Source of the DNA: Asterias rubens
Taxonomy: Eukaryota
DNA length: 64,000 bases
Direction: 5' to 3'
Assembly: GCF_902459465.1 (NCBI RefSeq)
Contig: NC_047079.1
Span: forward strand, 11,346,001 to 11,410,000
Made by a program: the position numbers and the translations under genes. The notes under the pieces are model-generated. The model ran no database searches, was not told where the DNA came from, and worked only from the letters and a program-made list of their open reading frames with translations. Below are positions 11,210 to 37,100 of this stretch, piece after piece (the first letter of the stretch is position 1; the number at the start of each line of letters is the position of its first letter).

Positions 11210-14200
11210 ATGGACCAGGCATCAAATCCTTCAAGACGGTTCGCCACACCATCACTAGCCGTTTATATCTACGCGTTTATCGTGGGAGCTCAGCAAGGAG
11301 CGTTGGGTTCAGCATCACTTCAAGCAATTGAGTTTTTGGTCTCATTTGAGCTGGGGTATGAAGGCAAGAATAAAACATCGGGTGGGCCATGCTCCGGCGA
11401 GCAAGCCAACACCACCGGGAGTGACGAGGCCAACGCGTTAATTCAAGAACAGACATCTTCTGTTGCCTTCGTTGGGGCCATGCTAGGTGGCCTACCAGCG
11501 CTGTTAGTTGTTATTGTGCTTTCGACGTGGAGTGATGGCGCCCGTAGTTACAGACAGCTACGATTTGTGGCCGTTTTACCATGCATTGGAATGACCCTTT
11601 ATATGGCCGTATATGTTGTCGTTTTGGCGTTAAGACTATCGCCGTGGTTAACTCTTCTAGCATCCACTTTTATGGCGCTGGGAGGAGGGGTCTATCTCCA
11701 ATTTGCGATGATGACAAAGTATTTAATTTATGTAAATGCGGAAAGAGAGCGAGCAGTGTACATTATTTATCTGCAAATTTTGAGCTTCTCTGCGCAGGGT
11801 TTTTCACAGCTTGGCACCGGATATTTAATAGAGGGCGCTGGCTTCATAACTCCTTTCGTCATCCTCTTTTTCATTTGTCTTGGAACTACTGTCTTTGTTG
11901 CTATTTATCCACCGATAATAGAGGTAAGAACTTGGTAGTATTTAGTAATTTGAGTTTATGTGACAAGCTGGGCCCAGTTTCACAAATCCTGTTAACAAAT
12001 AAACTTGCTAAGCACAGCGGAATCTCCATAGTAGTTAGTCGTCAGTCGAGGCTGAATTTTAAAAAGCCTCCCAAGTCGTTTTCAAACAGTATAATTTATG
12101 AAGATTCAAGGCGCTCGCGGCGGCGGCCCCCTGGCCACATGTCACACACGAAAAAAGACCAGCGCGTGATATCTGGGGTCGTGCATCTGGGGGTGCCGCG
12201 TGCGCCCTGACGAAATGCTAACTAATAACAGGAATATTAGTTGCCAGCCAACACTTCATAATTTTAGTTTACTACACCGTTGCGACTGGTACCTCATTTA
12301 ATAGCAAAGAACATCTCTAGGCAATATTTTCTGCTAAACGGCTTTCATGAAATTGGGCCCGGGTCAGATAAAACACACCCTATGAATTTAGGTGACGTGT
12401 CTGGTACACGGGGGGGGGGGGGGGCTATTAAAGTCTAGTTGGTCACAAACATTGCGCCTCTGCTGCTCGTGCTTGTAACATTGGATTTGCCGGGTGCAAG
12501 GGCTGAAAGAAGTTGGGTCAGAAGAGGGCGCTTTCACTCAGACAAAAAAAGAATTGCTTAGCACAAACAAAGTTTTGCTTAGCAAATATAGGTTACAGCC
12601 AGAATACGCCATATTGCTGTATAAACAGGTACTCCCGTCATTTCATGCTTAGCAAAAAAAATTGCTTAGCGATATTTACTGAAATCGACCCTTGGTCTCT
12701 TTATCCACGCAGGCAAAGCCCACCACAGACGATCAACCCAAACGAGGAGGCGTGCTCACAATGTGTAGGGATATTCTGGCAGTGTTCAGGGATCCTGATA
12801 CTGGAGAATGCAACACCATTCTTGCGTTGTACTGTGTAAGCCTTCTCATTTACATGATGTTGACCATCTACTTCTTAATCTTGGTGCAAATCTATGTGTT
12901 GGGAACGCCCTTCTGTTGGTCACCATCTCTAATTGGTTACTTTGGTGTAGCGAAACTAGTGTCATGTGCCACAGGTAAGTAAATAAATGTAAAACTCGAA
13001 ACCTTTTTTTTTATTTATCAAGACTAGTCGAAACGTTGAGAACTCACTGAGGTAGTGCAAGTAATAACGATCCTTAGTAATAGTCCAAGCCGACTTTCTA
13101 CCTTAGCCTATAACTCATACTAAAAAAAAGAAAGATAATGTTGTAATTGAGATTAAATCATTTTAAAGCAAAGGTGGGTGTGTGAGGAACTACGTGCGCA
13201 GTCAAGGTGCCGGCAACTATAGGGCAAGCTTGAGCGGCGACCACTTTTCAACCACTAGTCAATGTTCCATGGTGATGATCTATGCATGATATACATAACT
13301 TGGTACCATGAAAAATCGCCAAATTTCTTTTTTGTTTTATGCATGAATTTTCAAGAGGTCATGCACTAGACTTGTGGACAAGTCGTTAATGGTCCCACGC
13401 GGTAAGATAGTCGAGGCTATGGCGAGATCACTGCTCTCGCGCGAACTGTTGGTTGCCGACTTCTACTCCCATGGGACCGTAGTCGTGACAGCAGTTGCAG
13501 AATACCGCCGCGGGAATCGCGGGGAGAGTCGGAACACTTTCACCGCGACAGACATTGAACGACTTGCCACAAGTCTAGTCATGCACCTACATCATGAACT
13601 GCTTCTAGAAACAAATTCGGTCGGTGAATTTTTCGTCAGAATTTTTTTCCGAACCCTTGTTCACAGCAATAAGGCATGAACTGAGGTAAGAGAAAGGTCT
13701 CGATGCCATGTACCCCTTGCATTTGGCGGTCATCTTATGTGCATGGGCGCGAAAGGCTAGCATAAGCCAAGAGTCATACACACAGCGCGTACACTTTTCC
13801 AGGGTCGACCCCAATCTGCCCGCGGTACGTTCGAAAAGCTTTGAAGTCGTTCTTGGGGCTCACCCCAGTCAGCCCCAAGTGCCCTGCTTGTGGAACGCGT
13901 CACTTGGGGGCTGGCTCGAGGTGCGCGCATGACATCCACGTCACCACGAGAGGGCGAGCGATCGTTCGATTAGCTCTTGTCGGGGCACACCCGAATGGGC
14001 ACCCAAAGATGGTGGTCAGTGACGTCATGTCAATCCCTCTACAGTACATATTGTATTTGCGTTGACTTTATGCTCTTTGTTTCAGGTCTGTTGGTTGGAG
14101 CCAAGGTCCTGAAGAGATATTTTGACGACGACATGATAATCCAGATCGGTATCTTGTCGATGCTGCTCAGCACTGTTATACCGATCTATGCTCGAACGGA

Positions 14201-16158
14201 TGCCGGATTATTTCTAAGTAAGTTCAATGTGCGCGTTCGATTTAAGCTTCTACCCCGCGCGGTGCTCACTCAGTCGGGTGAGCCCCTGACAAGAGCTCAA
14301 CAAACGATCACTCACCCTCTCGTGGTGACGTCTGCACCTCAGGCTCGCCCCCACCAAGTGACCCACTCCACAAGCAGGGCACTTGGGGCTGACCCGGGTG
14401 AGCCCCTGGAATGACGACAAAGCTCCGAACGTACCGGGGTAGTCTGGGGGTAGACCCGGGGAAGCTAATCGAACGCACCCAAAAAAGTTACTTTGACCCG
14501 CACAAGTACCAATTTACTCCGCTCCCGGGTAAATAGTTCTAAGCAATTATGACCAAGCCACAATATTTCGAGTCACTGAATTTCAGAATTAAACTTTTGT
14601 AAAACTGCTTTCAGTATTAAAAGAATTGAAAAACATTGTGAAATGTAGACCAGACATTAAAGTAGATTAAACATTCGAATGAGGTTTAATAATCTTAATA
14701 ATCATTGTTTCCCTCCAGTTGTTCTTTTTGGCTGTTTTCGTATTTTACCGGGTGCAGTCATTACAGCCAGTGTGTCCAAACATGCAAAGAAACAACATTT
14801 CGGTAAGTGTTCAAGTTTTATAATACCGTTTCAGAATAGCAAAATTCACAATTTTACACATGCATATTCGGCTAATTATCACAAACAATTGGAAAAAAAC
14901 AAGGTACAAAAATCAGAGTTTTAATTGCATCCAGATTGTTGCTACCGACTCCCTTTCTTACGTTACAAATATTATTGGTTCAAGAATATTAACGTGATAG
15001 TGTGTGAAAGAGGGAGGGGGGGGGTGGTCAGGGAGACTTTATGGTAGACTTTGGAGGGCGCCCCACTATAGCTGGTAGTTTTGGACTAACGATATTAATT
15101 TTGTTTTTATACCCATACACCGATGTGTGTATAAAGCACTGTATACAATGTACATGTACTGTGAAACAAATATCACAGGCATGTTACTCGGGTAGGAATC
15201 GAACCCATGACCCTTGCAATTCTAGAGCAGTGTCTTACCAACTAGACTACCGAGTTTTGAATCCTATGTTTTGGCAGCGGGTACCACAACAATTATAAGA
15301 AATGTTAAGGGGTAAAGAACATTAATTTTGGTTTTTACCCATACACCGATGTGTGTTAGCACTGTACACTCAGTACTTTCCCCGAATCCTGTGAACATAT
15401 CGTGTATACAAGAAAAGAGGCAGTCGCCCATTGCAGGGTAGCCCGCCATCACCTAATAGGAGGGTTAGGGTTGAACTATATGCACAATGTATGCTACTTA
15501 ATTTTGACAGACATTCGAATATAATTAACTTCTCCACCTTCAAAGCAACTTTGGTAAACCATATCTGTGTGGAAATTATTCTATTTTTTAGGGAGCTTGT
15601 TTGGCGTGACTATGGCCATAGAAAGTCTGGCAAGTTCATTAGCTCCCATTATATTCGGCTCTATCTACACACTGACTGTTGCTGATGATCCGCAGTTTGT
15701 TTTTAAACTAATGGCTGGCCTCGCGGTGATACCATCCACTCTCATCATGTAAGTAGAATGGAACCCTTGCATTGGCAACCATCTTGGATAAAATTTGTAT
15801 GCTGTTCTACATTTAAGATGGTGGTCAATGACGTCATGCGCAATTCATCTTTTAAACATCGTCATATAAATCCCCTGGCGTGAGAAAGCACCTCTTTTCC
15901 ATCACTTTGGGAGTCAGTTCTGTATAAACATTTCAACTCTCAAGATGACACACGTAGTGTGCAAGGAGTCTACATGTACGCCAGAGAAACCAAAGGTGAA
16001 GGGTCCCAAACAAACAGATATTATAATGAACTTCACCATTATCTCAAATTATTTTATTTTCTAGGTGCATACAATGCTGGAATATGACTTCGGGTGTGGC
16101 CAACTACACCGAGTACAAAGAGGGCGCCCTACTAGCTAGCTCGGGTCTGAAGAAATGA
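11210..16158 (+). CDS. SLC46/PCFT-like MFS transporter, copy 1. Coding exons 11210-11923, 12713-12974, 14086-14217, 14719-14802, 15592-15748, 16065-16158; about 480 aa
   Basis: In-phase GT-AG junctions total 1443 nt. N-terminal helix is followed by a Cys-containing luminal loop (NKTSGGPC...IQEQTS), then WSDG..R, YVLGTPFCWSPSLIGY and GSLFGVTMAIESLASSLAPIIFGSIY, all typical of SLC46. An acceptor at 11154 and a donor at 9741 suggest a non-coding first exon ending at 9740. Confidence 0.85.
11970..12360. mobile_element. MITE with GGGCCCA(A/G)TTTCA TIRs (possibly PIF/Harbinger-type)
   Basis: GGGCCCAGTTTCAC...ATGAAATTGGGCCC. Relatives near 19536-19925, 41361-41535, 52290, 56920 and 62560-62810. Confidence 0.65.
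13367..13577. mobile_element. MITE with TAGACTTGTGG TIRs and 9-bp TSD GTCATGCAC (copy at 20929-21139)
   Basis: TIR and TSD read directly from the sequence. Confidence 0.85.
14233..14478. mobile_element. MITE with GCGTTCGATT(T)AGCTTC TIRs; an inverted partial copy lies at 13799-13994
   Basis: TIRs are visible, and there is a 27-bp perfect complement between 13868-13894 and 14367-14393. Confidence 0.75.
15171..15254 (-). mobile_element. tRNA-derived SINE head (copies at 22731-22814 and 52761-52845)
   Basis: A-box-like TAGTCTAGTTGG and B-box GGTTCGATTCC, followed by a non-tRNA body. Confidence 0.75.
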
Positions 16159-18775: not shown

Positions 18776-21700
18776 ATGGACCAGGCATCAAATCCTTCAA
18801 GACGGTTCGCCACACCATCACTAGCCGTTTATATCTACGCGTTTATCGTGGGAGCTCAGCAAGGAGCGTTTGGTTCAGCATCACTTCAAGCAATTGAGTT
18901 TTTGGTCTCATTTGAGCTGGGGTATGAAGGCAAGAATAAAACATCGGGTGGGCCATGCTCCGGCGAGCAAGCCAACACCACCGGGAGTGACGAGGCCAAC
19001 GCGTTAATTCAAGAACAGACATCTTCTGTTGCCTTCGTTGGGGGCATGCTAGGTGGCCTACCAGCGCTGTTAGTTGTTATTGTGCTTTCGACGTGGAGTG
19101 ATGGCGCCCGTAGTTACAGACAGCTACGATTTGTGGCCGTTTTACCATGCATTGGAATGACCCTTTATATGGCCGTATATGTTGTCGTTTTGGCGTTAAG
19201 ACTATCGCCGTGGTTAACTCTTCTAGCATCCACTTTTATGGCGCTGGGAGGAGGGGTCTATCTCCAATTTGCGATGATGACAAAGTATTTAATTTATGTA
19301 AATGCGGAAAGAGAGCGAGCAGTGTACATTATTTATCTGCAAATTTTGAGCTTCTCTGCGCAGGGATTTTCACAGCTTGGCACCGGATATTTAATAGAGG
19401 GCGCTGGCTTAATAACTCCTTTCGTCATCCTCTTTTTCATTTGTCTTGGAACTACTGTCTTTGTTGCTATTTATCCACCGATAATAGAGGTAAGAACTTG
19501 GTAGTATTTAGTAATTTGAGTTTATGTGACAAGCTGGGCCCAGTTTCACAAATCCTGTTAACAAATAAACTTGCTAAGCACAGCGGAATCTCCATAGTAG
19601 TTAGTCGTCAGTCGAGGCTGAATTTTAAAAAGCCTCCCAAGTCGTTTTCAAACAGTATAATTTATGAAGATTCAAGGCGCTCGCGGCGGCGGCCCCCTGG
19701 CCACATGTCACACACGAAAAAAGACCAGCGCGTGATATCTGGGGTCGTGCATCTGGGGGTGCCGCGTGCGCCCTGACGAAATGCTAACTAATAACAGGAA
19801 TATTAGTTGCCAGCCAACACTTCATAATTTTAGTTTACTACACCGTTGCGACTGGTACCTCATTTAATAGCAAAGAACATCTCTAGGCAATATTTTCTGC
19901 TAAACGGCTTTCATGAAATTGGGCCCGGGTCAGATAAAACACACCCTATGAATTTAGGTGACGTGTCTGGTACACGGGGGGGGGGGGGGGCTATTAAAGT
20001 CTAGTTGGTCACAAACATTGCGCCTCTGCTGCTCGTGCTTGTAACATTGGATTTGCCGGGTGCAAGGGCTGAAAGAAGTTGGGTCAGAAGAGGGCGCTTT
20101 CACTCAGACACAAAAAAAATTGCTTAGCACAAACAAAGTTTTGCTTAGCAAATATAGGTTACAGCCAGAATACGCCATATTGCTGTATAAACAGGTACTC
20201 CCGTCATTTCATGCTTAGCAAAAATAATTGCTTAGCGATATTTACTGAAATCGACCCTTGGTCTCTTTATCCACGCAGGCAAAGCCCACCACAGACGATC
20301 AACCCAAACGAGGAGGCGTGCTCACAATGTGTAGGGATATTCTGGCAGTGTTCAGGGATCCTGATACTGGAGAATGCAACACCATTCTTGCGTTGTACTG
20401 TGTAAGCCTTCTCATTTACACGATGTTGACCATCTACTTCTTAATCTTGGTGCAAATCTATGTGTTGGGAACGCCCTTCTGTTGGTCACCATCTCTAATT
20501 GGTTACTTTGGTGTAGCGAAACTAGTGTCATGTGCCACAGGTAAGTAAATAAATGTAAAACTCGAAACCTTTTTTTTATTTATCAAGACTAGTCGAAACG
20601 TTGAGAACTCACTGCGGTAGTGCAGGTAATAACGATCCTTAGTAATAGTCCAAGCCGACTTTCTACCTAAGCCTATAACTCATACTAAAAAAAGAAAGAT
20701 AATGTTGTAATTGAGATTAAATCATTTTAAAGCAAAGGTGGGTGTGTGAGGAACTACGTGCGCAGTCAAGGTGCCAGCAACTATAGGGCAAGCTTGAGCG
20801 GCGACCACTTTTCAACCACTAGTCAATATTCCATGGTGATGATCTATGCATGATACATAACTTGGTACCATGAAAAATCGCCAAATTTCTTTTTTGTTTT
20901 TTGCATGAATTTTCAAGAGGTCATGCACTAGACTTGTGGACAAGTCGTTAATGGTCCCACGCGGTAAGATAGTCGAGGCTATGGCGAGATCACTGCTCTC
21001 GCGCGAACTGTTGGTTGCCGACTTCTACTCCCATGGGACCGTAGTCGTGACAGCAGTTGTAGAATACCGCCGCGGGAATCGCGGGGAGAGTCGGAACACT
21101 TTCACCGCGACAGACATTGAACGACTTGCCACAAGTCTAGTCATGCACCTACATCATTAACTGCTTCTAGAAACAAATTCGGTCGGTGAATTTTTCGTCA
21201 GAATTTTTTTCCGAACCCTTGTTCACAGCAATAAGGCATGAACTGAGGTAAGAGAAAGGCCTCGATGCCATGTACCCCTTGCATTTGGCGGTCATCTTAT
21301 GTGCATGGGCGCAAAAGGCTAGCATAAGCCAAGAGTCATACACACAGCGCGTACACTTTTCCAGGGTCGACCCCAATCTGCCCGCGGTACGTTCGAAAAG
21401 CTTTGAAGTCGTTCTTGGGGCTCACCCCAGTCAGCCCCAAGTGCCCTGCTTGTGGAACGGGTCACTTGGGGGCTGGCTCGAGGTGCGCGCATGACGTCCA
21501 CGTCACCACGAGAGGGCGAGCGATCGTTCGATTAGCTCTTGTCGGGGCACACCCGAATGGGCACCCAAAGATGGTGGTCAGTGACGTCATGTCAATCCCT
21601 CTACAGTACATATTGTATTTGCGTTGACTTTATGCTCTTTGTTTCAGGTCTGTTGGTTGGAGCCACGGTCCTGAAGAGATATTTTGACGACGACATGATA

Positions 21701-23716
21701 ATCCAGATCGGCATCTTGTCGATGCTGCTCAGCACTGTTATACCGATCTATGCTCGAACGGATGCCGGATTATTTCTAAGTAAGTTCAATGTGCGCGTTC
21801 GATTTAAGCTTCTACCCCGCGCGGTGCTCACTCAGTCGGGTGAGCCCCTGACAAGAGCTCAACAAACGATCACTCACCCTCTCGTGGTGACGTCTGCACC
21901 TCAGGCCAGCCCCCACCAAGTGACCCACTCCACAAGCAGGGCACTTGGGGCTGACCCGGGTGAGCCCCTGGAATGACGACAAAGCTCCGAACGTACCGGG
22001 GTAGTCTGGGGGTAGACCCGGGGAAGCTAATCGAACGCACCCAAAAAAGTTACTTTGACCCGCACAAGAACCAGTTTACTCCGCTCCCGGGTAAATAGTT
22101 CTAAGCAATTATGACCAAGCCACAATATTTCGAGTCCACTGAATTTCAGAATTAAACTTTTGTAAAACTGCTTTCAGTAAAGAATTTAAAAACATTGTGA
22201 AATGTAGACCAGACATTAAAGTAGATTAAACATTCGAATGAGGTTTAATAATCTTAATAATCATTGTTTCCCTCCAGTTGTTCTTTTTGGCTGTTTTCGT
22301 ATTTTACCGGGTGCAGTCATTACAGCCAGTGTGTCCAAACATGCAAAGAAACAACATTTCGGTAAGTGTTCAAGTTTTATAATACCGTTTCACAATAGCA
22401 AAATTCACAATTTTACACATGCATATTCGGCTAATTATCACAAACAATTTGGAAAAAAACAAGGTACAAAAATCAGAGTTTTAATTGCATCCAGATTGTT
22501 GCTACCGACTCCCTTTCTTACGTTACAAATATTATTGGTTCAAGAATATTAACGTGATAGTGTGTGAAAGAGGGAGGGGGGGGGGGTCAGGGAGACTTTA
22601 TGGTAGACTTTGGAGGGCGCCCCACTATAGCTGGTAGTTTTGGACTAACGATATTAATTTTGTTTTTATACCCATACACCGATGTGTGTATAAAGCACTG
22701 TATACAATGTACATGTACTGTGAAAAAAATATCACAGGCATGTTACTCGGGTAGGAATCGAACCCATGACCCTTGCAATTCTAGAGCAGTGTCTTACCAA
22801 CTAGACTACCGAGTTTTGAATCCTATGCTTTGGCAGGGGGTACCACAACAATATAAGAAATGTTTAGGGGTAAATAACATTAATTTTGGTTTTTACCCAT
22901 ACACCGATGTGTGTTAGCACTGTACACTCAGTACTTTCCCCGAATCCTGTGAACATATCGTGTATACAAGAAAAGAGGCAGTCGCCCATTGCAGGGTAGC
23001 CCGCCATCACCTAATAGGAGGGTTAGGGTTGAACTATATGCCTATGTATGTTACTTAATTTTGACAGACATTCGAATATAATTAACTTCTCCACCTTCAA
23101 AGCAACTTTGGTAAACCATATCTGTGTGGAAATTATTCTATTTTTTTAGGGAGCTTGTTTGGCGTGACTATGGCCATAGAAAGTCTGGCATGTTCATTAG
23201 CTCCCATTATATTCGGCTCTATCTACACAATGACTGTTGCTGATGATCCGCAGTTTGTTTTTAAACTAATGGCTGGCCTCGCGGTGATACCATCCACTCT
23301 CATCATGTAAGTAGAATGGAACCCTTGCATTGGCAACCATCTTGGATAAAATTTGTATGCTGTTCTACATTTAAGATGGTGGTCAATGACGTCATGCGCA
23401 ATTCATCTTTTAAACATCGTCATATAAATCCCCTGGCGTAAGAAAGCACCTCTTTTCCATCACTTTGGGAGTCCGTTCTGTATAAACATTTCAACTCTCA
23501 AGATGACACACGTAGTGTGCAAGGAGTCTACATATACGCCAGAGAAACCAAAGGTGAAGGGTCCCAAACAAACAGATATTATAATGAACTTCACCATTAT
23601 CTCAAATTATTTTATTTTCTAGGTGCATACAATGCTGGAATATGACTTCGGGTGTGGCCAACTACACAGAGTACAAAGAGGGCGCCCTACTAGCTAGCTC
23701 GGGTCTAAAGAAATGA
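18776..23716 (+). CDS. SLC46/PCFT-like MFS transporter, copy 2. Coding exons 18776-19489, 20279-20540, 21648-21779, 22278-22361, 23150-23306, 23623-23716
   Basis: About 99% identical to copy 1, with all splice sites and the reading frame intact. By eye there are 11 coding substitutions. Confidence 0.8.
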
Positions 23717-25181: not shown

Positions 25182-28100
25182 TCAGTCGAAAGTTGTTCTC
25201 TTTCCTGAAAAACCACCACCTAAAAACAAAAACAAAAGAAAATTGGGGGGAAAATGGTTAGTTTTACCATACATTTATATTCTTGGTTTATCTACTATTA
25301 TTACAGCCGTGTTTTAACAAAACAAACCGGTTTTTACACTCATTTTATCAATCACACACATATGATAGGTTCTGCATAAGTTTTTGTATTCAAATTCAAG
25401 GTGCAATACTAGCCAACGGAAACCAACAAAAAGTGTGAAATTTTTATGCTTTTTTGTGAGTGTCCTTTTAGAAATGACAATATTTTCACATTTTAACAAA
25501 CCCTTGAGTGAAACGGTTAACTGGGGTTTCACTAGGAACCGCACTGAAGTAGCTCAAAGCTCATTGTCTCTCAATGTCTGAAGATATTTCAGCTATTTTT
25601 TCAACATGAGACACGAAAAACAGTCTGAATTCAGATACAAGTTTAAGTCTCTGCAGATCCAAGTATATTGGAAAGAATGTAATGATTGGAAATATTAGGT
25701 TGCCGCAGAAAAGTTTGATTTAACAACGTTGCATGAACATTGCCAGTCATAAGGTATTGAAAAAGAAAACCATAAAAAGACTATCTTATATTCGTTACTG
25801 GTACATACCTCCACGTCCGCCACCACCACGACCTCCACGGAAACCACCTCCGCGTCCACCACCACCGCGACCTCCACGGAATCCACCACCACGTCCGCCA
25901 CCACCGCGACCTCCACGGAATCCTCCTCCTCGGCCACCACCAAAACCACCACCACGTCCACCTGGGATAAATTAAAACAAACAAAATATAATAAATGAAA
26001 TGAAAATTGAACACCTGTCGTGGGTCCTAGCGACAGGTTTATTTATAGTTAATGACTTGTTAAAAGTGGTTGAATAATCAACAAAACCCAAATTGGGATA
26101 CAGACATATACTGATTAATGTTAACTTAATTTTTTAAAATCATAACTCATGCCTAGAAGATTTGGCAACACCTTTTTACAGAAACCGATTATTAATAAAC
26201 TTTAAAATCTCTTGATTCTAGTGTTAGAAAAGTGGCATAAGATAGGCCTACATCTTTATAATAAACATGGATATATGTACCCTTCATAACAGTACACAAA
26301 TAGAAGCAAGTTTGACAAAAAGCAGTAAGTAGTGAATGTTCATTGTAGCACACAATGTTTATATGCTATGATCAGTCACAAAGTGGCAACAAAATAGCAC
26401 AAGGATGAATTGGAAAATACTTCAAACAAAAGCAGATATAACAATACAATTGAAGTCTTTGTAACATTTCATTTTACACAACAATCAAGAAGATATTCAA
26501 CATACTCAACATAAAAACTGTTTGTTTTCAGCAAACTTTCTTCTGAATCAGGGAGAGTTAAAAGCTCCGTTATCTCATACAACAAATCAAAATTAATATA
26601 CCTCAGTTTTGAATACAATGGTGTTTAATGATAGATTCACTTGTTTAAATTCAAGAAGCTTCCGAGGTGCATCTTGAATCATATTTTAAACCCAAAGGTC
26701 TCAGAAGTTGTCTTACCTCTTGGTGATCCGAAGCTTGTTCTAGCTCTAGCGTAGTCAATGGCTAGACTGTAACCATCGAGGTCTGATCCGTTCAGTTTCT
26801 CCATGGCAGCAGCTGCAGCACCCTCAGAGGCGTACTCTGCGTATGCAAACCTTTTGAAACGAAATAATCAAATAATTTAATATGTTGTGGAAACTACCAA
26901 GTTTTTTTTTACTTTTGTGAGAACTGTTTTAAGGTATAAACCGACAATAATTCATAGGTCAGAAGTCAAGTTGCTGTTCCAATACTAGACCAACAGCAAA
27001 GTCAGAGAAGCTCACACAACTCGCGCTTTCATAATATTATTGACAACAGTAAGTATCTACAAGGACAACCAACATCAAAATTCCGAAAATCCATCAACAC
27101 CTTCTTATGATCCATTTGGGTTTCGAGTATTTTGATTGATTTTCTACTGTAGGTAGCAGCCGTCGTTTTCAATTAACTCTTCCAGAGACAAAGGACGCAT
27201 TGAACCCATCTCAAGTTAGAACGAGTTACTCATCCTAACTGGAGATTGGATAAATTCTAGCATTTTTGTGAAATCAGCTGCAGGCATACCAAACTCATCA
27301 TCAATGCTTTGGCAATAAGTAATACCTTCAAATTAAATGGTTGATTCAGGACATTCTAATCTACTATCTGGGGTTTTGGTTGAAGTTACTCACCCTTTAG
27401 GCGTGTTGGTGTCTCTGTCCATTGGCATTCTCACAGAGTCAGCACCAGGGAAGTGAGATTCCAATTGACCCAGTTGAGTTTCGGATGACATTCCTCGGAT
27501 ATACAGTGTCTTCCTGTCTTTGTCTCCTATAAATAAAAGAAAAAATAAAATAAAAAATTATCTGCATTTATATGACGCCACAATCCGCCTACAAAGTTAC
27601 TCAAGTTTCTGAGTTGTGATTATAAAAATTAACTTTAAGAGAGAAGCATTTCTCCACTTGGTCTCAACAACTGATGAACATGTTGATTTGAAACATTGAT
27701 CAGAGCATACTGAACGAAACGTTTTAAGTCGTAAAAGCCATTACACACTTTCAGACCAGAAAAAAAAAAAAAAAAAATTCACAGATTTACAAATAACTTG
27801 CAGGGTTTACAGAAGGTAGTGGTAAAAGACTTCTCTTGAAATATTATTCCATGAAATGCTTTACTTTTTGAGAAAACATTAAAACATATCAATTCTCGAC
27901 AACGAGAATTACTGATTAACACACGTCATGACACGGCGAAACGTGCGGAAACAAGGGTGGGTTTTTCCGTTATTTTCTCCCGACTCCGATGTCCAATTGA
28001 GCCTAAATTTTCACAGGTTTGTCGTTTTATATATAAGTTGTGATACACGAAGTGTGGGCATTGGACAACACTGTTTACCAAAAGTGTCCACTGGCTTTAA

Positions 28101-31100
28101 CAACCATTTCTATTCAGAACCAACAGTGCTCAAAAGAGAATCTGCAAACCTCTTAGTTTAAACTTTCTTAGCTTGAGAGTCTGCAGTCCCAATTAATTAG
28201 GTGAACTCCTTGTAAAAAAAAAAGAAACAAAAAAGAAAAACAAAGATATTCTTACCTCCATCACCACCAGATCGTTTCTTGCTGAGGGCGTAGTCCAGAT
28301 TCAAGAAGGAGCTTTTCAGCTGCGAGCCTTGGAACTTCTCAAAAGCTTCCTTCGCTGAATCTTGTGTGTCAAAGTCGGCATAGGCATAACTGTAAAAAGA
28401 AGCACGCAGCACCATCAGTGTCAAATTCAGATATATTTTTTAACAAAATAAATTGTGGCGTTTGTTTTTTAAAAACCTTAACAGTAACCGCTCAGATTTG
28501 AGTGTTCACAGTGTGCCCTTGGGAGTTCTCAGTGACCGAACATCAGGCCAGTAATGCCATTTCATGTATTTGTCAGCTTTTCATAATATTCCAACCATCA
28601 ATCGGTCAATATTTCAGCAAGTTGGACTACTTAGGGAAACATTTTTGACTGGTCCCAAAGGGTTCAAACAGTCATTTGGCCAGAGGAACAATAAGCTAAA
28701 TATGCTGCAAGTGAATAGCTGGACAATGTTGGTTTGGGTTTGAGAGGGGGGGGGGATGAGCGACCCTTACTGGTAACTTACTCTGCCTTTCCAGAACCAT
28801 CTCGTCTGTTTGGTCTTCTTACTTCAATAGCTTCCATGAGTAGCTTAATATCACCTTCGGAGACATCATCTGTCAATCCCTTAATGTAAAGGGTAGTTGA
28901 CGGCTGGGTAGGTCCACGATCTAATTGAAATGAACAAATAACCATGATTTACTAAAGGTTTCACAAATTTCATGCATTGCAGGAATTTAATCAGGGCATC
29001 ATTACAGCTAAACCCTTTTGGAAACCATGGCTCTGGCTTAGTTCAGTCAGCCATCTTGAAAAATGTGTGTTTTTTGCAGCAGCTTGAAACGAACACGACA
29101 TAGCCCAAGCTGAAACAAAAGCCCAAGACCATGGTATAAAAACCTTAAGTGAGGACACTTGCCCAAACTTAAACCAGCTTTAGGTAGTTTTTAATCCTTA
29201 AAAAGTCCCAGGAATAGTCCTAATAAGGACTGTCTTTGTGCAATTAACCCCAGGCATACCAATGTGACTCAAGTTACACCAGAGGATTCACAATAGACCT
29301 TTATCACAGTGAGCCCATTTTCATTTCACTCCATTTATTTAAAACTCATTGTTAACCAAACCAAGGCCGGACAAGATAATAGTCTAGTGCCAAATTAGCG
29401 CAATGAATGTCAACATTCTTTACTTTAATGGAAACAGAGAATATGACCACGATGGTGATGGCGCGAGTAAGGTCCATTGAGCAACTTCTACTAAGATTGC
29501 AAAAAAAAGTTTGTGTTCTACGATAGCTTACCTCCACCACCTCCACCTCTCTGGTTCTTGCTCTTATCACCGACGTAATCCAAGATGACATTCCATCCAT
29601 CGACCTCAGCCCCCTGCATCTCAGACATTGCTTTCTCAACCCCGGACTCGTCAGCAAACTCAAGGTAGGCATAACTGCATCAAGAGAAAAAACAACCTAA
29701 TCATTATTCACGTTTCAAGTTTCATGAAATGTACATCTTCCTCTTTAAATTCAGACTTCATGGTGTGTACAAAGATATTATTAGAAGTTATTCTTTGGCT
29801 TTTGGAGACTTGGAACAACGCATTGAGGTGTACCGTCCAATATTCGACCGGCCTGCTTCATAGCTTTGCTAACTACTATAAACACAGCCATGCATTACAG
29901 ATGCAAGTTTAAGTCCCGAATCTTGCCCCAAACAGGCAGTTGTTAATAATGTAGTTCATCATTTACAGTCAGCCTGAACATGCGCTTGTAATTGGCCAGG
30001 CATACCAAACTTTTATAATCAGAGACAATAGACGGATTGCATACGTCATTCACCATCATCTTTGATGAAACACGCACGCATGACAGGCCATCATCAGCTA
30101 ACAATTGTGCGCAGCAGGTACATGAGCGATCGATGAAGATATGTGCAATCCATCTATAGAAAGAACATTTAAAAAATTAATGACCAATGTTTAATGACGC
30201 ACCCTCCTGGTCTGCCCTCCCTGGTCGGCATGCGCACTTCCCTGCAGCCGAACTTTGTCTTCAAAGTATCCTCAGTGGTGTCGAAGCATAGTCCCTTCAC
30301 AAAGAGAGTTCTGTTGTTGGAATCATTTCGGCCTCCTATAATTTCAGAAAAAACATGCCTGTTATAAAGTAAAATTTTTAAAATACAGCTTTTATACAAT
30401 CTTTTTTCTTTGATATCTTGGTTTTAGAACTACACCAATGAAAAATGGTAATAAGTCTGGCATCTAATACAAATCTTAATGGCTATATCAAGGCACTTCA
30501 CAACTTTCAAGTATCCTTTTTTATTCTGGGATTCCTGGTTCATTCCTCAGACTCTCTCCACCCCCTGGGGAGCAAAAGACCACAAACTGCTTCCAAAACA
30601 ATACAGTCTCAACCTTTTCAGGGGTCCATTTCACTTTGCAATAACACCCATCGGAGGTGTCTTTCTAGAAGTGTCTTTCTAAAGAACACAAGTGTCATGT
30701 CAAAAAAGTACTTGGTAATATCAAGATAAAAACAACCATAGAAGATGACTTGAATAAGGTGATTGGAATTCTAGCATTAGGTCAATCCTTAAGGATTTCT
30801 TACCAGTGCTTTGAGTATTATTTCTGGGGGTCTTCTCTCCTCTATCCTTTCCACGCTCAAGACGGAGAGCATTTCCGTTCAGTTCTTGGTGATTCAATTC
30901 CATGGCCTGCTTGAAAGCTTTGTTGGAGTGGACATCTACGTAACCAAACCTGGGAGCAAAACAGTACCAAAGTATTCATCAAAATATAGTGTTGCAAGAG
31001 TGATAGACCATGTCCAAATTGGCGACTTAAGCTACGACTGTTGCCAAGAATTTACTTTGAAGCACGACGTCAAGCAATCCAGCCTTAGCTATATATTTGT

Positions 31101-34100
31101 AAAAAAACATTATAGACATAAGAACTTACAAAAAATTTGAAAATGACGAGCCAAACTTAACAAAAGCACATTGTAAATCAAGTTTCATATGGCATTTTTG
31201 TGTCGAGGACACCAGCAAATCAGATTTTTTGTTTTTGGCATAAGATGATCTTTGTCCAATTTGTAAGGGAGAGTGTTCAGCGATTATCAGACCAAATGCC
31301 TTCAACAAATCAGCAAAGTGACTGTCTGAATGGAACAGTAACTGTTAGTGATATGGTGAAAATGTCATCACTTAATCACAAAAAAAAAAGACCAAGCCCA
31401 CATCGACCCTCTACGTAGATTTCAAATGCATCATTCCACATCTTGCTTCTTCTTACTTGTTCAATGAGTGACTTTTGGGATGCTACGTTAAAGCCATCAT
31501 TCTCATGGTCACATGCTTGGAATTAAACAATGACAATTTTGATGGCAAGTCTGCTACCACCTGGCGATGTTATTAAGTCTCTCATTGCACAACAAGCCAA
31601 AGGCCATGTTTTGTTTACATGCAATGAGGACTCCGTTCGTAGTCACAGAAAAGTGGCCATTCGAGATGGTTGAGAAATTATTGCTCTAGCACAATTCAAT
31701 GCGACAGCCTCAAAATAATCAAAGAAATGATTTGAGATGATCGTTTTGGTACTTACGGTTTGTTTGGGATGACTCTAGCATTGAAGACCTCAACACCTTG
31801 GGCGGAGAAGAATTCCTCAAGCTCCTCACTTGAAGTGCCATTAACGATACCACCGATAAAGATGGAAATGATCTCTGCAAAATCAATCAAATCAAAGTTC
31901 AGATTAGAAAATAGAAGCTGCTTGTTGTGTTTTCAAAAACTAAATATACACATTTATCTTCAGAAATAATACCAGCAACTAAATAGATAACATTTTGTCT
32001 ACAAATGATCTCAAATAAAGGGGTTAGTTGCAAATTATTTCAAACTAATTTTTGTCAGGAAGTGCAAACACGATGTTACTCATTTACACAATATAAGTAT
32101 AGTTTAACAATCAAAAGAATTAACAAGTTTAAATGATTATCACAAGCCATCAAATTATGAGAGAAAAGAGTGAGAAGCAAGATCAATGCAAAGCACACTG
32201 TCGTCCAATAAATACAATAATAGACAATGGGTATTTTGTCCTCGGAGAGCAATTGTTCTCTTACCGGATTTAACCTCCTCAGCCTGTGATTTCTTTGTCA
32301 CCTTAGCTTCTCCACCAGCCTGCTTCTTCTTCTTCATGGGAGGAGCATCATCTTCTGAAATAAAAATTTAAGACAAATATTAAATCCATCTCATCATTTC
32401 AAATCCTCTGACACGAGTTAAAAGTTTGAAGGATCCAACTGATCAACCCTCAACAGGGGTCAGTAGTTACACTTGCGATAGACAAGCTAGTCAATCAAGA
32501 AATACTGTTAATAATTATTGCGTTAATATTAACTTACCTTCTTCTTCGCTATCATCTTCTTCTTCATCACTGTCTTCCTCATCATCATCTTCCTCTTCTT
32601 CTACCTCGGCCTTCTTAGCTGCTTTCTTTGCTCCTTTAACCTTTTCAACAAGAAAAAAAAAGAAGTATGAATCAAAGGATGTCCTGAAACTGTTTCATCA
32701 CCCGTGGAATTTAAATTATAACCTCCAAGGAGCTTTTGGAACCAGTATCTTATGTACCAAGAAAGTTTGACACGAGGGCCAGACTTATTTAAGTTGGAGA
32801 AAATTACAGCATCTTTATTTTGGTAATTTCAAAAGAATTATTCAGTCATAAGTCTGAACAATCTCATCCTTGACTGCAACTTTACTCTAATCATGTTTCC
32901 CCCCCCCCCCAGATTGAATAGCATCTTAGACTGTATACATACCGGTGCCTTGGTTTCTTCTTCTTCCTCCTCATCACTGTCCTCTTCATCATCTTCGTCG
33001 CTATCATCTTCGTCGCTATCATCTTCGTCCATCTCTACTTGTTTAGGTTTAGCTGCTGCCTTGGCTCCCTTCTTAACTGGCACTTCCACCTCCTCTTCAC
33101 TATCATCCTCCTCTTCATCACTATCTTCCTCATCATCTTCATCAGAGTCCTCTTCTGGTGCAGCAGCCTTGGTGGCTTTTGCTGGGGCTACTTCCTCCTC
33201 GCTATCGTCCTCATCACTATCCTCTTCATCACTGTCCTCTTCAACCTCAACCTGTGAAAAATGAGGGGATTTTAGTCAAGGTGTGACCGGGCATGGGGTT
33301 ACTAAAAAGAAGGAATACTTCATAAAGTCCAAGGTCTGACCCACATGTTGAGCTGAATTAATAAAGTATGAAGATCTGAACATCTGACGTAACACTTCGA
33401 GGCTCGTGAATAACACCAGAGATCTGCCTTGAGACAGGCGTGTACATTCACCTTTGACCTACCCTTCTATGTCACTGCACGTTTATCAAATAATATCGTT
33501 GTTTCAAATGGAATCACTGGATATAGCAGCAGGGACCCGTCTTTATCCTTGAAGACAGGGGCCGGAGGGCCAAAGGGAGCAAGGGTCTTGACCAGACTTA
33601 CCTTTGGTGGTGGGGCCTTCTTAGCCGGTGTCTTCTTAGCAGGAGTTTTCTTAGCAGGTGTCTTCTTGGTGGCTTTGACCTGTGGGACAACCTCCATCGG
33701 TTCCTCCTCCTCACTGCTCTCCTCTTCGGAGGATTCCTGTTTCAACAAAATTCAAGTGTAACTATTTAACAGCGAACTTCCACTTGGGTCAAGAATGCAA
33801 CAGCATACCTAGAGTAACACAGGCTATCTTGGTGGTGCCACCACCTCCCCCCCCCCATGTTTCCCATAAACTTTGTCCTTGCCCTTTCAAAGATGAAGTT
33901 CCACCCATGCTTATGTAAAGGTCATGTCATGATCTGCCATTTCCATGCCCAAGTATCTACAGTCGATTCTTGTTTTAACGGCCACAAGCATTGTAAGGTT
34001 ATTATTATTATGTCAGGCATGGACACTTTCATGGGCTACCTTTTAACAATGAATGTGCCGCTTTTAAGAACAATTCTTTGGCGCATTTCTTACCTGTTTC

Positions 34101-37100
34101 TTCACAGGCTTCACCTTGGCTTCTTTCTTGCCCTTCTTGACACTGCTGTTAAGGATAACAAAAACTTCAATTAACCTTTTTTATAACAATTTATTCTGAT
34201 TAGTTCCAAAATAATATATTCAGATCATGAATTAAGGGCAGATCTGCCAAGATAAACATTATTTAGTCAGGGAGTTGTTGTAGAACAATCGGGGAAATAT
34301 ACAGAATGCCGTTTTAAATTAGAGAGATTAATCATATTTTGTTCACCAGGACATTATTTCAGTAGAATCAGTGATGATTGTCAGCTCTGATAAGGATTTG
34401 AATAACAGAACACTTCAAAGGGCACAAAGGCAATCGTCTCTGTAGCTTTGGCACTGTAACTAGTATTGATGTGGGAAACTTGTATGAAGATTTTCCTTAC
34501 ATAAGTTTTATCTTTGTTCAAGTAAAAACACATAACAAATAATTGTTGTCTAAAAATGTGTTGATAAGGTTAATGAGGTCAAGGAGAAAATCTTACGTTG
34601 GTGTTGCAACTTGGGCCTTTCCCTGTCAAAGACAAACAAAAAAAGAAAAGATATTCCATAAAACATTAGATTTAAAACTCAAATTATAATTTGCATAAAA
34701 AGAAAAGGCAATAATCATTGTTTATCAGAGCAACTTGAAACACATGACAACTTTACGATAACAATTGTACTTTATTCCGGTTATTTTTCATACACGTTTA
34801 AAATAAAATAATTAAAAACATTTAGGGAATGCTTACCTAGTGCATTTATTTTTTACAAAATGATATCTGTGGGGTGAAACTAAAAACAAACACTTGATTG
34901 TTGGTATGCGATAAAGTTGTTCATTTTCTTTGAAGATTTTGTTTCAACACAGATACTCATCAAATTTTAAGGTATCAACACTCATGAAACACGCAGATTG
35001 ACAACAAGGAATTTAAATATGGTTCAGGGTTCGACTTCACCTAGGGCTCAGACTGACCTCAAAAGAGTCAAACACCAGATTGTTCACTGTTGCCGTAGAA
35101 CAACAATCTTGTTTTTTTGTTTATTGAATTTTTTATTGTAATTAAATTTGATCTCTTGTTGGTAGTTTTATGTTTTTACTCTTTGCAGCTCGACAGCAAT
35201 TCAGCCTTCGGCTGCTATGGTTTTTGTTTTAATAAATCCTTTCAAATCAAGTTAATCAAATGATTTGATAAGACAATTTGATATAATTGGTAACTCATCT
35301 TAAGACAAATCTGAGAGTTAAGTGACGTCGACCCCCGATAACTCAACATTCCGTCACAATGTACATTTGCTAATCACTTACACCACGATCAAGCTTTCCC
35401 CTGACCAAGCCATGACTACGTCGTCAGGAACACAGGGTACCAGTCGATATATGATGTCAGCAACTCACGACAGAAGCAACCACCACTGGTAACCGGTAGC
35501 ACTCAAGTGTGATTCTAAGCACCTCTTTTTTATAGCCAAATAACTTCGTCATCTGAGAGGCCATTGTGAATGATACGTATTGAGATACAGATTTCACCAA
35601 AAATATTCTAAGTTTTGTGCTCTACATACAAAAAGATTGATTCTCTTGTTTTTCTGTTCAAATTTCTTCAAAATGTTGTTCCTGGGCCTGTCTAGTCGAG
35701 AACACAGTTTCTGAAAGTACTAGGTCAAAATGTTCAGCAGTGTAAAAATGTAAGTCCATGTCCATGAAACATCAATTAAAGCACGCGTCTTAAATCCAAT
35801 TGATTTTACAACAGTATGAAAACACTTGTGGCCAAGTAAAAATTCAGAATTGTTTTTTTTATGTTTTATTCCGATTCTTGCACATGCAGAGCAACAAAAC
35901 TAACAACATGTCTGGTGGTCTGTACCTTTTTAAGAATAAACATTTTGGAGGTGCTGATGGTTTGTGCAAAAGTAAGAAATTTGCCGCAAAATTTTCAATA
36001 AAACTACCACAAAATGGGTACAATTTTTATGCCTCTTTCACAAACAGGTTTTGCCAACCTGTGTTGTGTTTCTTTGGAATCCGAACAGGCCAACCTCGAT
36101 CTCCGCACATGTAAGTGTTTATTCCCACCTCTCTTCACCCAACATTGTGGGATTTGTAATACGCCCAACACTTTTTATTCGGCTCCGGACCACTGGTTTT
36201 CCGCCGTCCATACTTCGAATATCCTCCGCACATCAGTTCGGAATATCGAGGCACTACCCGACCGAGCTCAGTTTTTTGGAAGGTACCGCACAACATCGTT
36301 TTAACTTAATTATCTACTCAAGCTACATTTATTTTTAACAATTAGTCAAAGGGAACTCTCGTACAAATAGTATCTATATGATCCAACTTTAGCAAAACAA
36401 ATTAAAGAAATAATTAAGCCGAAATAAAAATAAATAAATAAAATGATTCTAGTTTTTTATCATGTTCAGGGACCTTTTTGGGAAAGAGAATCTAGGGAAG
36501 GCAAGCCTGTTCTGAAAATCAACAAAACTTTGTAAAATTTTCTCCAAACAAAAAAGAAAACTGAAAAACTTCACAATTTTAATTTCCAAAATGCAAAAAT
36601 GGACAAGGCTGCTCATAAAAATTACAGGAAATTACACATTTATCCTTTTGGGGACAAAACATGGCCTAGCTTTAGATTATTGCTAAGCTGTGGCACTTCA
36701 TGTGTTAATAAAGTATAATTTAATTGTTTGATTCGTCCATGATGATGTTGAAATGTACCGACCACATTTTAGGTTTTCCCGAAGAAAAGATAAAACCTAA
36801 GTTAAGTAAAATTCACTTTCTGACAAACAATGAATACTATTCTTAAAATAAATCATCAACTAGAACATCTAAAAACGAATTAAAGTTTGTATCACAAAAT
36901 TATTTCAAGTTATTGAGAAAAGTTGATTAATTTTTTGGACCACGTGGAAATCTGGACGCGCACGTGGTATCATGGCATGAGTGGGCGCACCACACAACGT
37001 GTGGAGGACGACAGGACGGCCAGCCGCCTCGCCTCATTCATTCGGTGGACCCATTTATTGAAAGAATTCCTCTTTTCACATGGTCAAAATGGTCATGAAA

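What the first reader, a model, noticed from the sequence alone, without database searches (positions are those of the whole stretch)
31280..31379. Box C/D snoRNA hidden in a nucleolin intron, guiding a peptidyl-transferase-region LSU rRNA site
Seen in sequence: on the host strand, a 7-bp terminal stem encloses box C GTGATGA, a D' CTGA and box D CTGA. The 11 nt just upstream of box D (AGGCAUUUGGU) pair with the conserved LSU rRNA segment GCCAAAUGCCU. Established knowledge: this segment carries yeast Am2280/Am2281 (snR13) and the vertebrate SNORD15 target. Vertebrate SNORD15 is hosted by RPS3, while vertebrate nucleolin hosts U20, U23 and U82. Inference: the D+5 rule points to the middle A (yeast A2280 equivalent), one position upstream of the SNORD15 site. 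That would mean a different host gene and possibly a methylation that vertebrates lack.
Basis: partly seen in the sequence, partly recalled or inferred. Interest (0 to 1): 0.75.

Follow-up and report, generated by a model that had tools for sequence, protein, structure and literature searches.

The report
Sea-star SNORD15-like snoRNA, shifted guide
An intron of a sea star's nucleolin gene carries a genuine small guide RNA of the ancient SNORD15/snR13 type. One extra base in its guide should move a ribosomal RNA methylation by one position compared with other echinoderms, vertebrates, flies and plants.

Summary
On the minus strand, 31379-31280 holds a 100-nt box C/D snoRNA with a 7-bp terminal stem, GUGAUGA, D' CUGA and D CUGA. 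It lies in the 807-nt intron that splits RRM1 of a nucleolin gene, and spliced RNA reads confirm that intron. The exons match 'nucleolin-like [Asterias rubens]'.

Orthologous snoRNAs sit in the nucleolin genes of Acanthaster, Strongylocentrotus (same intron) and the crinoid Anneissia (a different intron). A covariance model built from those three alone finds the window copy as its only significant hit (37.8 bits, E 2e-6).

Those three carry the guide CGAGGCAUUUGU|CUGA, matching the Rfam consensus of SNORD15 and close to those of fly Me28S-Am2589 and plant SNOR75. Under the D+5 rule this targets the third A of the LSU helix 70/71 triplet. The window copy has an inserted G and two substitutions (GAAGGCAUUUGGU|CUGA). 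Duplex stability is unchanged, but D+5 now falls on the middle A (yeast A2280).

A discrete mature RNA, the actual methylation and the sea star's own 28S sequence were not shown. It is a new member of a known kind with an unusual register shift. Earlier notes on this genome describe other intron-hosted snoRNA families, not this one.

The parts
31280..31379 (-). Whole box C/D snoRNA (100 nt)
   Evidence: Sequence read. It is the only C/D candidate in the window. It is the only significant hit of model R1, which was built from three other echinoderms (37.8 bits, E 2e-6). It is also the only stretch of the intron that aligns to the Acanthaster intron.
31373..31379 (-). 5' strand of the terminal stem (GUGAUUA)
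   Evidence: Pairs with 31286-31280. The inner 4 bp are paired in all four echinoderms, and two of those pairs change on both sides.
31365..31371 (-). Box C, GUGAUGA
   Evidence: UGAUGAC is invariant across the four echinoderms.
31321..31339 (-). Internal hairpin (ACUGUU / GACAGU, 7-nt loop) between box C and D'
   Evidence: Predicted. Acanthaster has GACUAUC/GAUAGUU at the aligned place, with a G-C to A-U change (read by eye). This rests on two species only.
31310..31313 (-). Box D', CUGA
   Evidence: CUGA is present at the aligned place in Acanthaster and Anneissia but degenerate in S. purpuratus. No conserved rRNA target was found for the sequence upstream of it.
31302..31307 (-). Degenerate box C' (UGUUGA)
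   Evidence: This is my reading. It aligns with the aauGAua segment of the SNORD15 consensus as seen in the Acanthaster hit, and with a perfect UGAUGA in the crinoid.
31291..31301 (-). Antisense guide AGGCAUUUGGU. D+5 is U at 31295. The inserted G is one of 31292/31293.
   Evidence: Alignment A1 shows the one-base insertion relative to three echinoderms, and the model alignment treats it as an insert. The best rRNA site is LSU GCCAAAUGCCU.
31287..31290 (-). Box D, CUGA
   Evidence: GUCUGA is invariant.
31280..31286 (-). 3' strand of the terminal stem (UAAUCGC)
30950..31756 (-). Host intron (807 nt, GT..AG) splitting RRM1 of nucleolin. The snoRNA lies 377 nt from the 5' splice site and 330 nt from the 3' splice site.
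   Evidence: 371 spliced RNA reads in run X28, plus spliced contigs in X20 and X4, skip exactly these 807 bases. The sequence was read.
25798..34147 (-). Host gene: nucleolin. It has N-terminal acidic runs, four RRMs each split by an intron, and a C-terminal GAR tail.
   Evidence: Stop-free segments. tblastn of the NCBI protein 'nucleolin-like isoform X1 [Asterias rubens]' maps every exon. The best non-echinoderm relatives are vertebrate nucleolins.

Best explanation
[quoted passage not shown] It is the sea-star orthologue of the guide family known as SNORD15 (vertebrates), snR13 (yeast), Me28S-Am2589 (Drosophila) and SNOR75 (plants).

Inferred from the known biology of intronic C/D snoRNAs:
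- It is transcribed as part of the nucleolin pre-mRNA.
- It is released from the spliced RRM1 intron by exonucleolytic trimming up to the snoRNP. That particle forms on the C/D kink-turn with SNU13, NOP56, NOP58 and fibrillarin.

Shown by sequence: its 11-nt guide next to box D pairs with 28S rRNA helix 70/71 (GCCAAAUGCCU).

Inferred from the D+5 ruler: fibrillarin 2'-O-methylates the rRNA nucleotide opposite the fifth guide position upstream of box D.
- In Acanthaster, Strongylocentrotus and Anneissia, and in the Rfam consensus sequences of the vertebrate, fly and plant families, that nucleotide is the third A of the AAA triplet (human A3764, yeast A2281).
[quoted passage not shown] The duplex keeps its predicted stability but slides by one, so the ruler points to the middle A (yeast A2280).

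I put about 0.9 on a real, functional SNORD15-type snoRNA. I put about 0.55-0.6 on the methyl group actually sitting on the middle A.
For: **Anatomy and chance**
- The boxes, stem and guide are as described.
- This is the only C/D candidate in 64 kb, against 0.10-0.48 expected.

**Host**
- The exons map to the protein 'nucleolin-like [Asterias rubens]'.
- The intron is confirmed by 371 spliced reads.

**Orthologues in nucleolin genes**
- Acanthaster L001:7641-7741 and S. purpuratus L002:15200-15296 lie in the same RRM1-splitting intron.
- Anneissia L003:7929-8030 lies in the intron after residue 49.
- No such element is present in the Biomphalaria or Anolis nucleolin genes.

**Family**
- Model R1, built without the window sequence, hits 31379-31277 at full length (37.8 bits, E 2e-6). 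Nothing else in the window or the two control loci scores better than E 0.4.
- The inner four pairs of the terminal stem are paired in all four species, with A-U / U-A / C-G and A-U / G-C exchanges.
- Only the snoRNA aligns between the Asterias and Acanthaster introns (E 5e-16).
- Sub-threshold Rfam matches of the orthologues show the same guide plus box D as SNORD15, snoMe28S-Am2589 and SNOR75. For Acanthaster the D'/C' module matches too.

**Target and register**
- The top-ranked site in a full rDNA unit is the helix 70/71 triplet. D+5 is position 2251 for the window copy and 2252 for the other three.
- Duplex energy is -18.2 kcal/mol against -18.3, -18.3 and -19.8.

**Close relatives**
- There are no differences inside the snoRNA in contigs or reads of three labelled organisms, while the flanking intron carries substitutions and indels.
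- The GG is present in all of them.
- A more divergent contig aligns only over 31272-31379.

**RNA**
- The intron has zero coverage except for a small hump overlapping the snoRNA.
Against: - **No discrete 100-nt RNA was shown.** The RNA-seq hump (at most 12 reads, against about 700 over the exons) covers 31100-31360. It misses the first roughly 20 nt of the snoRNA and extends 120-190 nt past its 3' end. The library is unstranded and not size-selected for small RNAs.
- **Rfam gathering thresholds are not reached.** The best hit for the window copy is snoZ103 at 32.2 bits, below its threshold of 44. SNORD15 does not match the window copy at E 10 or below.
- **The sea star's own 28S sequence was not examined.** The target comes from metagenomic eukaryotic LSU rRNAs that I picked with that very 22-mer.
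- **The D+5 rule has exceptions.** Yeast snR13 and U24 motifs direct D'+6 methylation (PMC5389607).
- **The rest of the genome could not be searched.** A paralogue with the ancestral register may exist, for example in RPS3 introns.
- **Only four species support the covariation.**
Confidence: 0.8

Rival explanations
1. It is a functional SNORD15-type snoRNA, but the methylated site is unchanged (third A), or both the middle and third A are methylated. This would happen if the ruler tolerates D+6 in this context, as it does for yeast snR13, which modifies A2280 and A2281 from one guide.
For: Yeast snR13 and U24 C'/D' motifs direct methylation six nucleotides from the box, and snR13 modifies two adjacent As (PMC5389607). 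The third-A register is conserved from plants to animals according to the Rfam consensus sequences, which suggests selection on that site.
Against: In yeast the D'+6 effect depends on an unusual D' box lacking its 5' C, with a C just upstream, plus an accessory guide. Here the guide uses the terminal, canonical CUGA preceded by U. No accessory pairing better than shuffled controls was found. In the same paper, inserting a U before the D' box moved the modified site.
Confidence: 0.22
2. It is a decaying or redundant copy. The insertion disabled the ancestral function, and another SNORD15 paralogue elsewhere in the genome (for example in RPS3 introns) does the work.
For: The guide lost two distal base pairs and gained an insertion. 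No clean mature-size RNA signal was seen. The rest of the genome could not be searched.
Against: Boxes C and D, the terminal stem and an 11-bp guide are all intact, and the duplex energy equals that of the orthologues. There are no substitutions within the snoRNA in three close relatives whose flanking intron varies, and a more divergent contig aligns only across the snoRNA. The element has been kept in this gene across all echinoderm classes sampled.
Confidence: 0.1
3. It is a chance constellation of short motifs in an AT-rich intron.
For: Boxes plus a stem alone are expected 0.1-0.5 times per window. The fold z-score is only -1.16.
Against: Orthologues sit in the same gene in three other echinoderms, an independent covariance model hits at E 2e-6, the stem shows compensatory changes, and the guide's best match is the known modified site.
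Confidence: 0.01

Closest known systems
Vertebrate SNORD15 (U15A/B; Rfam RF00067)
   Same: Both are box C/D snoRNAs whose guide lies directly upstream of the terminal box D and pairs with 28S helix 70/71 (CAAAUGCCUC). The echinoderm orthologues share GAGGCAUUUGUCUGA with the SNORD15 consensus, and Acanthaster also matches the D'/C' module upstream (model positions 107-141). SNORD15A guides A3764 (PMC5389715).
   Different: - It is 100 nt long, against a model length of 146 nt.
- It is hosted in nucleolin rather than RPS3 (PMC12667501).
- The Rfam score is far below the gathering threshold: 17.9 and 16.8 bits against 75 for the orthologues, and no hit for the window copy.
- The window copy has an extra G, so D+5 is the middle A rather than the third.
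Yeast snR13
   Same: It targets the same AAA triplet of 25S helix 70/71, and A2280 (the middle A) is methylated in yeast (PMC4174444; PMC5389607).
   Different: snR13 is an independently transcribed gene. It uses the internal D' guide with an unusual D' box (UCGA/CUCGA) and an accessory guide to modify two adjacent As. The sea-star RNA is intronic, uses a canonical terminal D box, and shows no supported accessory pairing.
Drosophila snoMe28S-Am2589 (RF00529) and plant SNOR75 (RF02539)
   Same: Their Rfam consensus sequences carry GCGAGGCAUUUGUCUGA and AAuCGAGGCAUUUGUCUGA. These match the Acanthaster, Strongylocentrotus and Anneissia guides.
   Different: All matches fall below the gathering thresholds: 23.4 and 21.8 bits against 37, and 14.4 and 17.7 against 50. 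Neither family matches the window copy at E 10 or below, because of the insertion.
Vertebrate nucleolin-hosted snoRNAs (U20/SNORD20, U23/SNORA75, U82/SNORD82)
   Same: They share the same host gene and the same principle, a snoRNA riding in a highly expressed nucleolar or ribosome-biogenesis gene. SNORD82 was re-found in the Anolis nucleolin gene at the gathering threshold.
   Different: They belong to different guide families with different targets. None was detected in the four echinoderm nucleolin genes at gathering thresholds. Conversely, no SNORD15-like guide is present in the Anolis nucleolin gene.

Membership tests
Box C/D snoRNA (class) | Box C (RUGAUGA) near the 5' end and box D (CUGA) near the 3' end | tested here: met
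   GUGAUGA at 31371-31365 and CUGA at 31290-31287. Both are invariant in four echinoderms.
Box C/D snoRNA (class) | Terminal stem that brings boxes C and D together | tested here: met
   The stem is 7 bp in the window copy. The inner 4 bp are paired in all 16 cells of the four species, and two pairs change on both sides.
Box C/D snoRNA (class) | Antisense element of at least 10 nt ending next to box D or D', complementary to a stable RNA | tested here: met
   An 11-bp duplex (10 Watson-Crick plus 1 G-U) starts at D+1 and is the top site in a full rDNA unit. dG is -18.2 kcal/mol.
Box C/D snoRNA (class) | Internal C'/D' boxes | tested here: inconclusive
   D' is a canonical CUGA, but C' is degenerate (UGUUGA) and is my own reading. 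No conserved D' target was found.
Box C/D snoRNA (class) | Accumulates as a discrete small RNA bound by fibrillarin, NOP56, NOP58 and SNU13 | tested here: inconclusive
   The only intronic RNA-seq signal overlaps the snoRNA, but it is offset toward the 3' side and weak. Protein binding cannot be tested with these tools.
SNORD15 / snR13 / Me28S-Am2589 / SNOR75 guide family | Guide pairs with LSU helix 70/71 (C)CAAAUGCCU(CG) | tested here: met
   The orthologues share the guide plus box D with the three Rfam consensus sequences.
SNORD15 / snR13 / Me28S-Am2589 / SNOR75 guide family | Score at or above the Rfam gathering threshold | tested here: not met
   None of these families matches the window copy at E 10 or below. 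The orthologues score 16.8-23.4 bits against thresholds of 37-75. Filing it under RF00067 by sequence score is therefore not justified. The case for homology rests on the shared 3' module and the shared target.
SNORD15 / snR13 / Me28S-Am2589 / SNOR75 guide family | Ruler register: D+5 opposite the third A (human A3764, yeast A2281) | tested here: not met
   In the window copy D+5 is the middle A, position 2251 of the proxy LSU. It is 2252 for Acanthaster, S. purpuratus and Anneissia. The cause is a one-base insertion.
Echinoderm nucleolin-hosted SNORD15-like snoRNA (family defined here) | Significant full-length match to a model built from other members | tested here: met
   R1, built from Acanthaster, S. 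purpuratus and Anneissia, scores 37.8 bits at E 2e-6 over model positions 1-101. It is the only significant hit in the window.
Echinoderm nucleolin-hosted SNORD15-like snoRNA (family defined here) | Sense-strand location in a nucleolin intron | tested here: met
   It occupies the RRM1-splitting intron in Asterias, Acanthaster and S. purpuratus. In Anneissia it occupies the intron after residue 49.
Nucleolin (host gene) | Acidic N-terminal runs, four RRMs and a C-terminal GAR domain, with vertebrate nucleolin as the nearest non-echinoderm relative | tested here: met
   Searches show the architecture. Searches show that vertebrate nucleolins are the best hits outside echinoderms.

The most novel reading that the evidence does not exclude
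On the lineage leading to Asterias, a ribose methylation conserved from plants to vertebrates (third A of the helix 70/71 triplet) has moved to the neighbouring A. The cause would be a single-base insertion in its only guide RNA, followed by retuning of the guide duplex. That would be a natural example of an rRNA modification site drifting by one nucleotide, and it would leave the ancestral site unmodified.
Probability: 0.35. Interest if true: 0.65.

Novelty: new member of a known kind. Interest (0 to 1): 0.5.

Why it matters
The helix 70/71 methylation cluster sits at intersubunit bridge B3. In yeast it contributes to 60S stability and translational fidelity (PMC4174444).

Suppose the predicted shift is real. 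Closely related sea stars, Asterias against Acanthaster, would then differ by one nucleotide in where a deeply conserved 2'-O-methyl group sits. That would be a ready-made natural test of two things: the D+5 ruler, and how much the exact position of a modification matters.

The work also shows that this ancient guide family is hosted by nucleolin throughout the echinoderm classes sampled, rather than by RPS3 as in mammals, and that it moved between introns of the same gene. This adds a dated case of host-gene and intron relocation.

On the practical side, the family falls below Rfam gathering thresholds in echinoderms, so searches at those thresholds will not find it.

Tried and rejected
1. 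**Rfam at gathering thresholds** finds nothing at the locus in the window or in the orthologous loci. The snoZ103 and snoR38 sub-threshold hits for the window copy match only generic box features and do not share its guide.
2. **Accessory (extra) base pairing** like that of snR13. The box-C-proximal 28 nt of each of the four snoRNAs were folded against 200 nt of LSU around the target. The energies were no better than shuffled sequences, with 12-91% of shuffles doing at least as well. Dropped.
3. **A second target for the D' guide.** No site is shared among species, and the Asterias D' guide has none. An SSU match (CUUAAAGGAAUU) appears for Acanthaster and S. purpuratus. It contains several G-U pairs, S. 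purpuratus lacks a D' box there, and the match is absent in Asterias.
4. **A relaxed scan of all nucleolin introns** gave one more C/D-like candidate at 28612-28485 on the minus strand, with box C TGATGG. It has no rRNA complement and I treat it as chance.
5. **Protein routes that failed:**
   - An exon-sized query found no homologues.
   - Isoform X2 proteins are not indexed for locus look-up. The look-up worked only after I found the X1 isoforms.
   - A fragment from another sea star (P0002) sits on a contig whose DNA could not be served.
6. **Literature searches** for echinoderm SNORD15 or nucleolin-hosted snoRNAs returned nothing relevant.
7. **Earlier scan notes** hold nothing on this locus.
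Full report
**1. What is in the sequence**

The minus strand of 31379-31280 is a 100-nt element with these parts:
- 5' stem GUGAUUA
- two spacer bases
- box C GUGAUGA
- a 51-nt spacer containing a 6-bp hairpin
- D' CUGA
- a degenerate C' (UGUUGA)
- the 11-nt guide AGGCAUUUGGU
- box D CUGA
- 3' stem UAAUCGC

I scanned for RTGATGA followed by CTGA with a terminal stem of at least 5 bp. This element was the only candidate on either strand of the 64-kb window. Dinucleotide-preserving shuffles gave 0.48 such candidates on average, or 0.10 with a 7-bp stem. The single-sequence fold is not exceptional (z = -1.16), which is usual for C/D snoRNAs.

**2. Host gene and intron**

The minus strand from about 34147 to 25798 encodes a protein with N-terminal acidic runs, four RRMs each split by an intron, and a GAR tail.
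- A profile-free search with one exon found a full-length Acanthaster nucleolin-like protein.
- Using that protein as the query recovered the NCBI protein 'nucleolin-like [Asterias rubens]'. Its sequence maps onto every exon of the window.
- The best relatives outside echinoderms are vertebrate nucleolins.
- Earlier notes of this scan had already called the genome a sea star.
- The snoRNA lies in the 807-nt GT..AG intron 31756-30950, between ...ARVIPNKP and FGYVDV... of RRM1.
- 371 spliced reads of an RNA-seq run, plus spliced contigs of two further runs, skip exactly these 807 bases.

**3. Rfam**

Nothing reaches a gathering threshold in the window except three tRNAs. At relaxed thresholds the element matches snoZ103 (32.2 bits, threshold 44) and snoR38. 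Those alignments rest on boxes and spacing and do not share its guide.

**4. Orthologues**

I obtained the longest isoforms from the protein clusters and fetched the nucleolin genes of several species.
- **Acanthaster planci** (L001): a C/D snoRNA with the same architecture at 7641-7741.
- **Strongylocentrotus purpuratus** (L002): one at 15200-15296.
- **Anneissia japonica**, a crinoid (L003): one at 7929-8030.
- **Biomphalaria** (L004) and **Anolis** (L005): no such element.

Position within the gene:
- In Acanthaster and Strongylocentrotus the snoRNA is in the same RRM1-splitting intron as in the window.
- In the crinoid it is in the intron after residue 49, 77 nt from the 3' splice site.

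Evidence that the four copies are one family:
- UGAUGAC, AGGCAUUU and GUCUGA are invariant across the four-way alignment.
- The inner four pairs of the terminal stem are formed in all four species. The innermost pair is A-U, U-A or C-G, and another is A-U or G-C.
- Between the Asterias and Acanthaster introns, the snoRNA is the only alignable stretch (E 5e-16).
- A covariance model built from the three other species alone hits 31379-31277 at full length with 37.8 bits and E 2e-6. The next hit in the window has E 0.43, and the two control loci give nothing.

**5. Which family**

- The Acanthaster copy matches positions 107-141 of the SNORD15 model locally, that is, D', C', guide and box D.
- Both the Acanthaster and the urchin copies match the guide plus box D of Drosophila snoMe28S-Am2589 and plant SNOR75.
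- All of these matches are far below the gathering thresholds.
- The printed consensus sequences show that vertebrates, flies and plants all have ...GAGGCAUUUGU directly before CUGA, as do the three other echinoderms.
- I therefore read the echinoderm RNAs as orthologues, or at least exact functional counterparts, of SNORD15. They do not pass Rfam's membership score.

**6. Target and register**

- One of them, L006, holds a complete rDNA unit by Rfam. The flanks are strongly conserved across 83 of the contigs.
- Against that unit, the best site for all four guides is GCCAAAUGCCUCG.
- The three other echinoderms form 11-12 Watson-Crick pairs from D+2, and D+5 lies opposite the third A.
- The window copy forms one G-U plus ten Watson-Crick pairs from D+1, and D+5 lies opposite the middle A.
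- The difference is a one-base G insertion plus CG-to-GA at the distal end of the guide.
- Predicted duplex energy is unchanged: -18.2 against -18.3, -18.3 and -19.8 kcal/mol.

Literature on the numbering:
- Yeast carries m5C2278, Am2280, Am2281 and Gm2288 here, in helices 70/71 of domain IV at bridge B3 (PMC4174444). That numbering makes A2280 the middle A.
- snR13 guides both As through an unusual D' box and an accessory guide (PMC5389607).
- SNORD15A guides A3764 (PMC5389715).
- Mouse Snord15a/b lie in Rps3 (PMC12667501).
- The mapping of A3764 to the third A follows from applying the D+5 rule to the SNORD15 consensus. It also fits the offset of 7 to G3771, which equals the yeast offset from A2281 to G2288.

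**7. Close relatives and the reality of the insertion**

Contigs or reads of three differently labelled organisms were laid on the intron.
- None shows a difference inside the snoRNA.
- None shows an indel at the GG.
- All show substitutions and indels in the flanking intron. One 685-nt contig shows 10 differences, with none listed inside the snoRNA.
- One run also holds a more divergent contig, with 12 differences in 108 nt and no gaps. It aligns only over 31272-31379, and its flanks are unlike the window.
- Its guide letters were not shown, so I cannot say whether it carries the insertion.

**8. Expression**

In a random-primed RNA-seq run the exons are covered about 700-fold. The intron is at zero except in two places.
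- A small hump of up to 12 reads spans 31100-31360.
- A 40-nt piece at 31525-31562 is a repeat, with loose ends on both sides in every run.

The hump overlaps the 3' 80 nt of the snoRNA and continues past its 3' end. Two short contigs of another RNA run cover 31160-31361. This could be a 5'-trimmed, 3'-extended processing intermediate, because mature 100-nt RNAs are largely lost in such libraries. It is not proof of the mature species.

**9. Verdict**

- The element is the Asterias member of an echinoderm-wide, nucleolin-hosted SNORD15-type snoRNA family.
- The new points are the host gene (nucleolin, with a change of intron between crinoids and the other classes) and a lineage-specific one-base register shift in an otherwise deeply conserved guide.
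- Three things are not shown: the mature RNA, the methylation itself, and the absence of a second copy with the ancestral register.

Noticed in passing
window 13719-15256 and 21281-22815: A segmental duplication with a period of about 7.56 kb. Identical tRNA-Ser(AGA) genes lie at 15183-15256 and 22742-22815 on the minus strand, and identical 45-mers at 13719 and 21281. The tRNAs score only 43 bits and have several non-standard pairs.
   Followed up: no
window 55142-55214 (-): A tRNA-Asn(GTT) gene, 56.4 bits.
   Followed up: no
window 31525-31562 (same intron): A stretch of about 40 nt has very high depth in all four runs laid (up to about 17,000), with unlike sequence on both sides. It is a fragment of a high-copy repeat or an abundant transcript, not part of the snoRNA.
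   Followed up: partly
window 31100-31280 (-), just 3' of the snoRNA: The only other intronic RNA-seq coverage extends 120-190 nt beyond the snoRNA's 3' end. There is no counterpart in Acanthaster, where the snoRNA ends 88 nt from the splice site. It could be a 3'-extended precursor or a stable intron fragment.
   Followed up: partly
window 28485-28612 (-), intron splitting RRM3: A weak second C/D-like candidate with box C TGATGG, box D CTGA and a 6-bp stem. No convincing rRNA complement was found. Probably chance.
   Followed up: partly
L003:7929-8030 (Anneissia japonica nucleolin): The crinoid copy lies in a different intron of nucleolin, after residue 49, 77 nt from the 3' splice site. Its C' is a perfect UGAUGA overlapping D'. 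This implies the snoRNA moved between introns of the same host gene.
   Followed up: yes
L001:7698-7708 and L002:15235-15246: In Acanthaster and S. purpuratus the sequence UUCCUUUG upstream of the D' position is complementary to SSU rRNA CUUAAAGGAAUU, over 11-12 bp including three G-U pairs. In Acanthaster D'+5 would fall on a G. The match is lost in Asterias and Anneissia.
   Followed up: partly
window 31380-31389 (-): A run of ten T residues lies directly upstream of the snoRNA's 5' stem. One related contig has one T fewer.
   Followed up: no
L005:6906-6973 (Anolis nucleolin): SNORD82 is found at the gathering threshold (54.5 bits). SNORD20 and SNORA75 are not detected at gathering thresholds in this lizard's nucleolin gene.
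   Followed up: no
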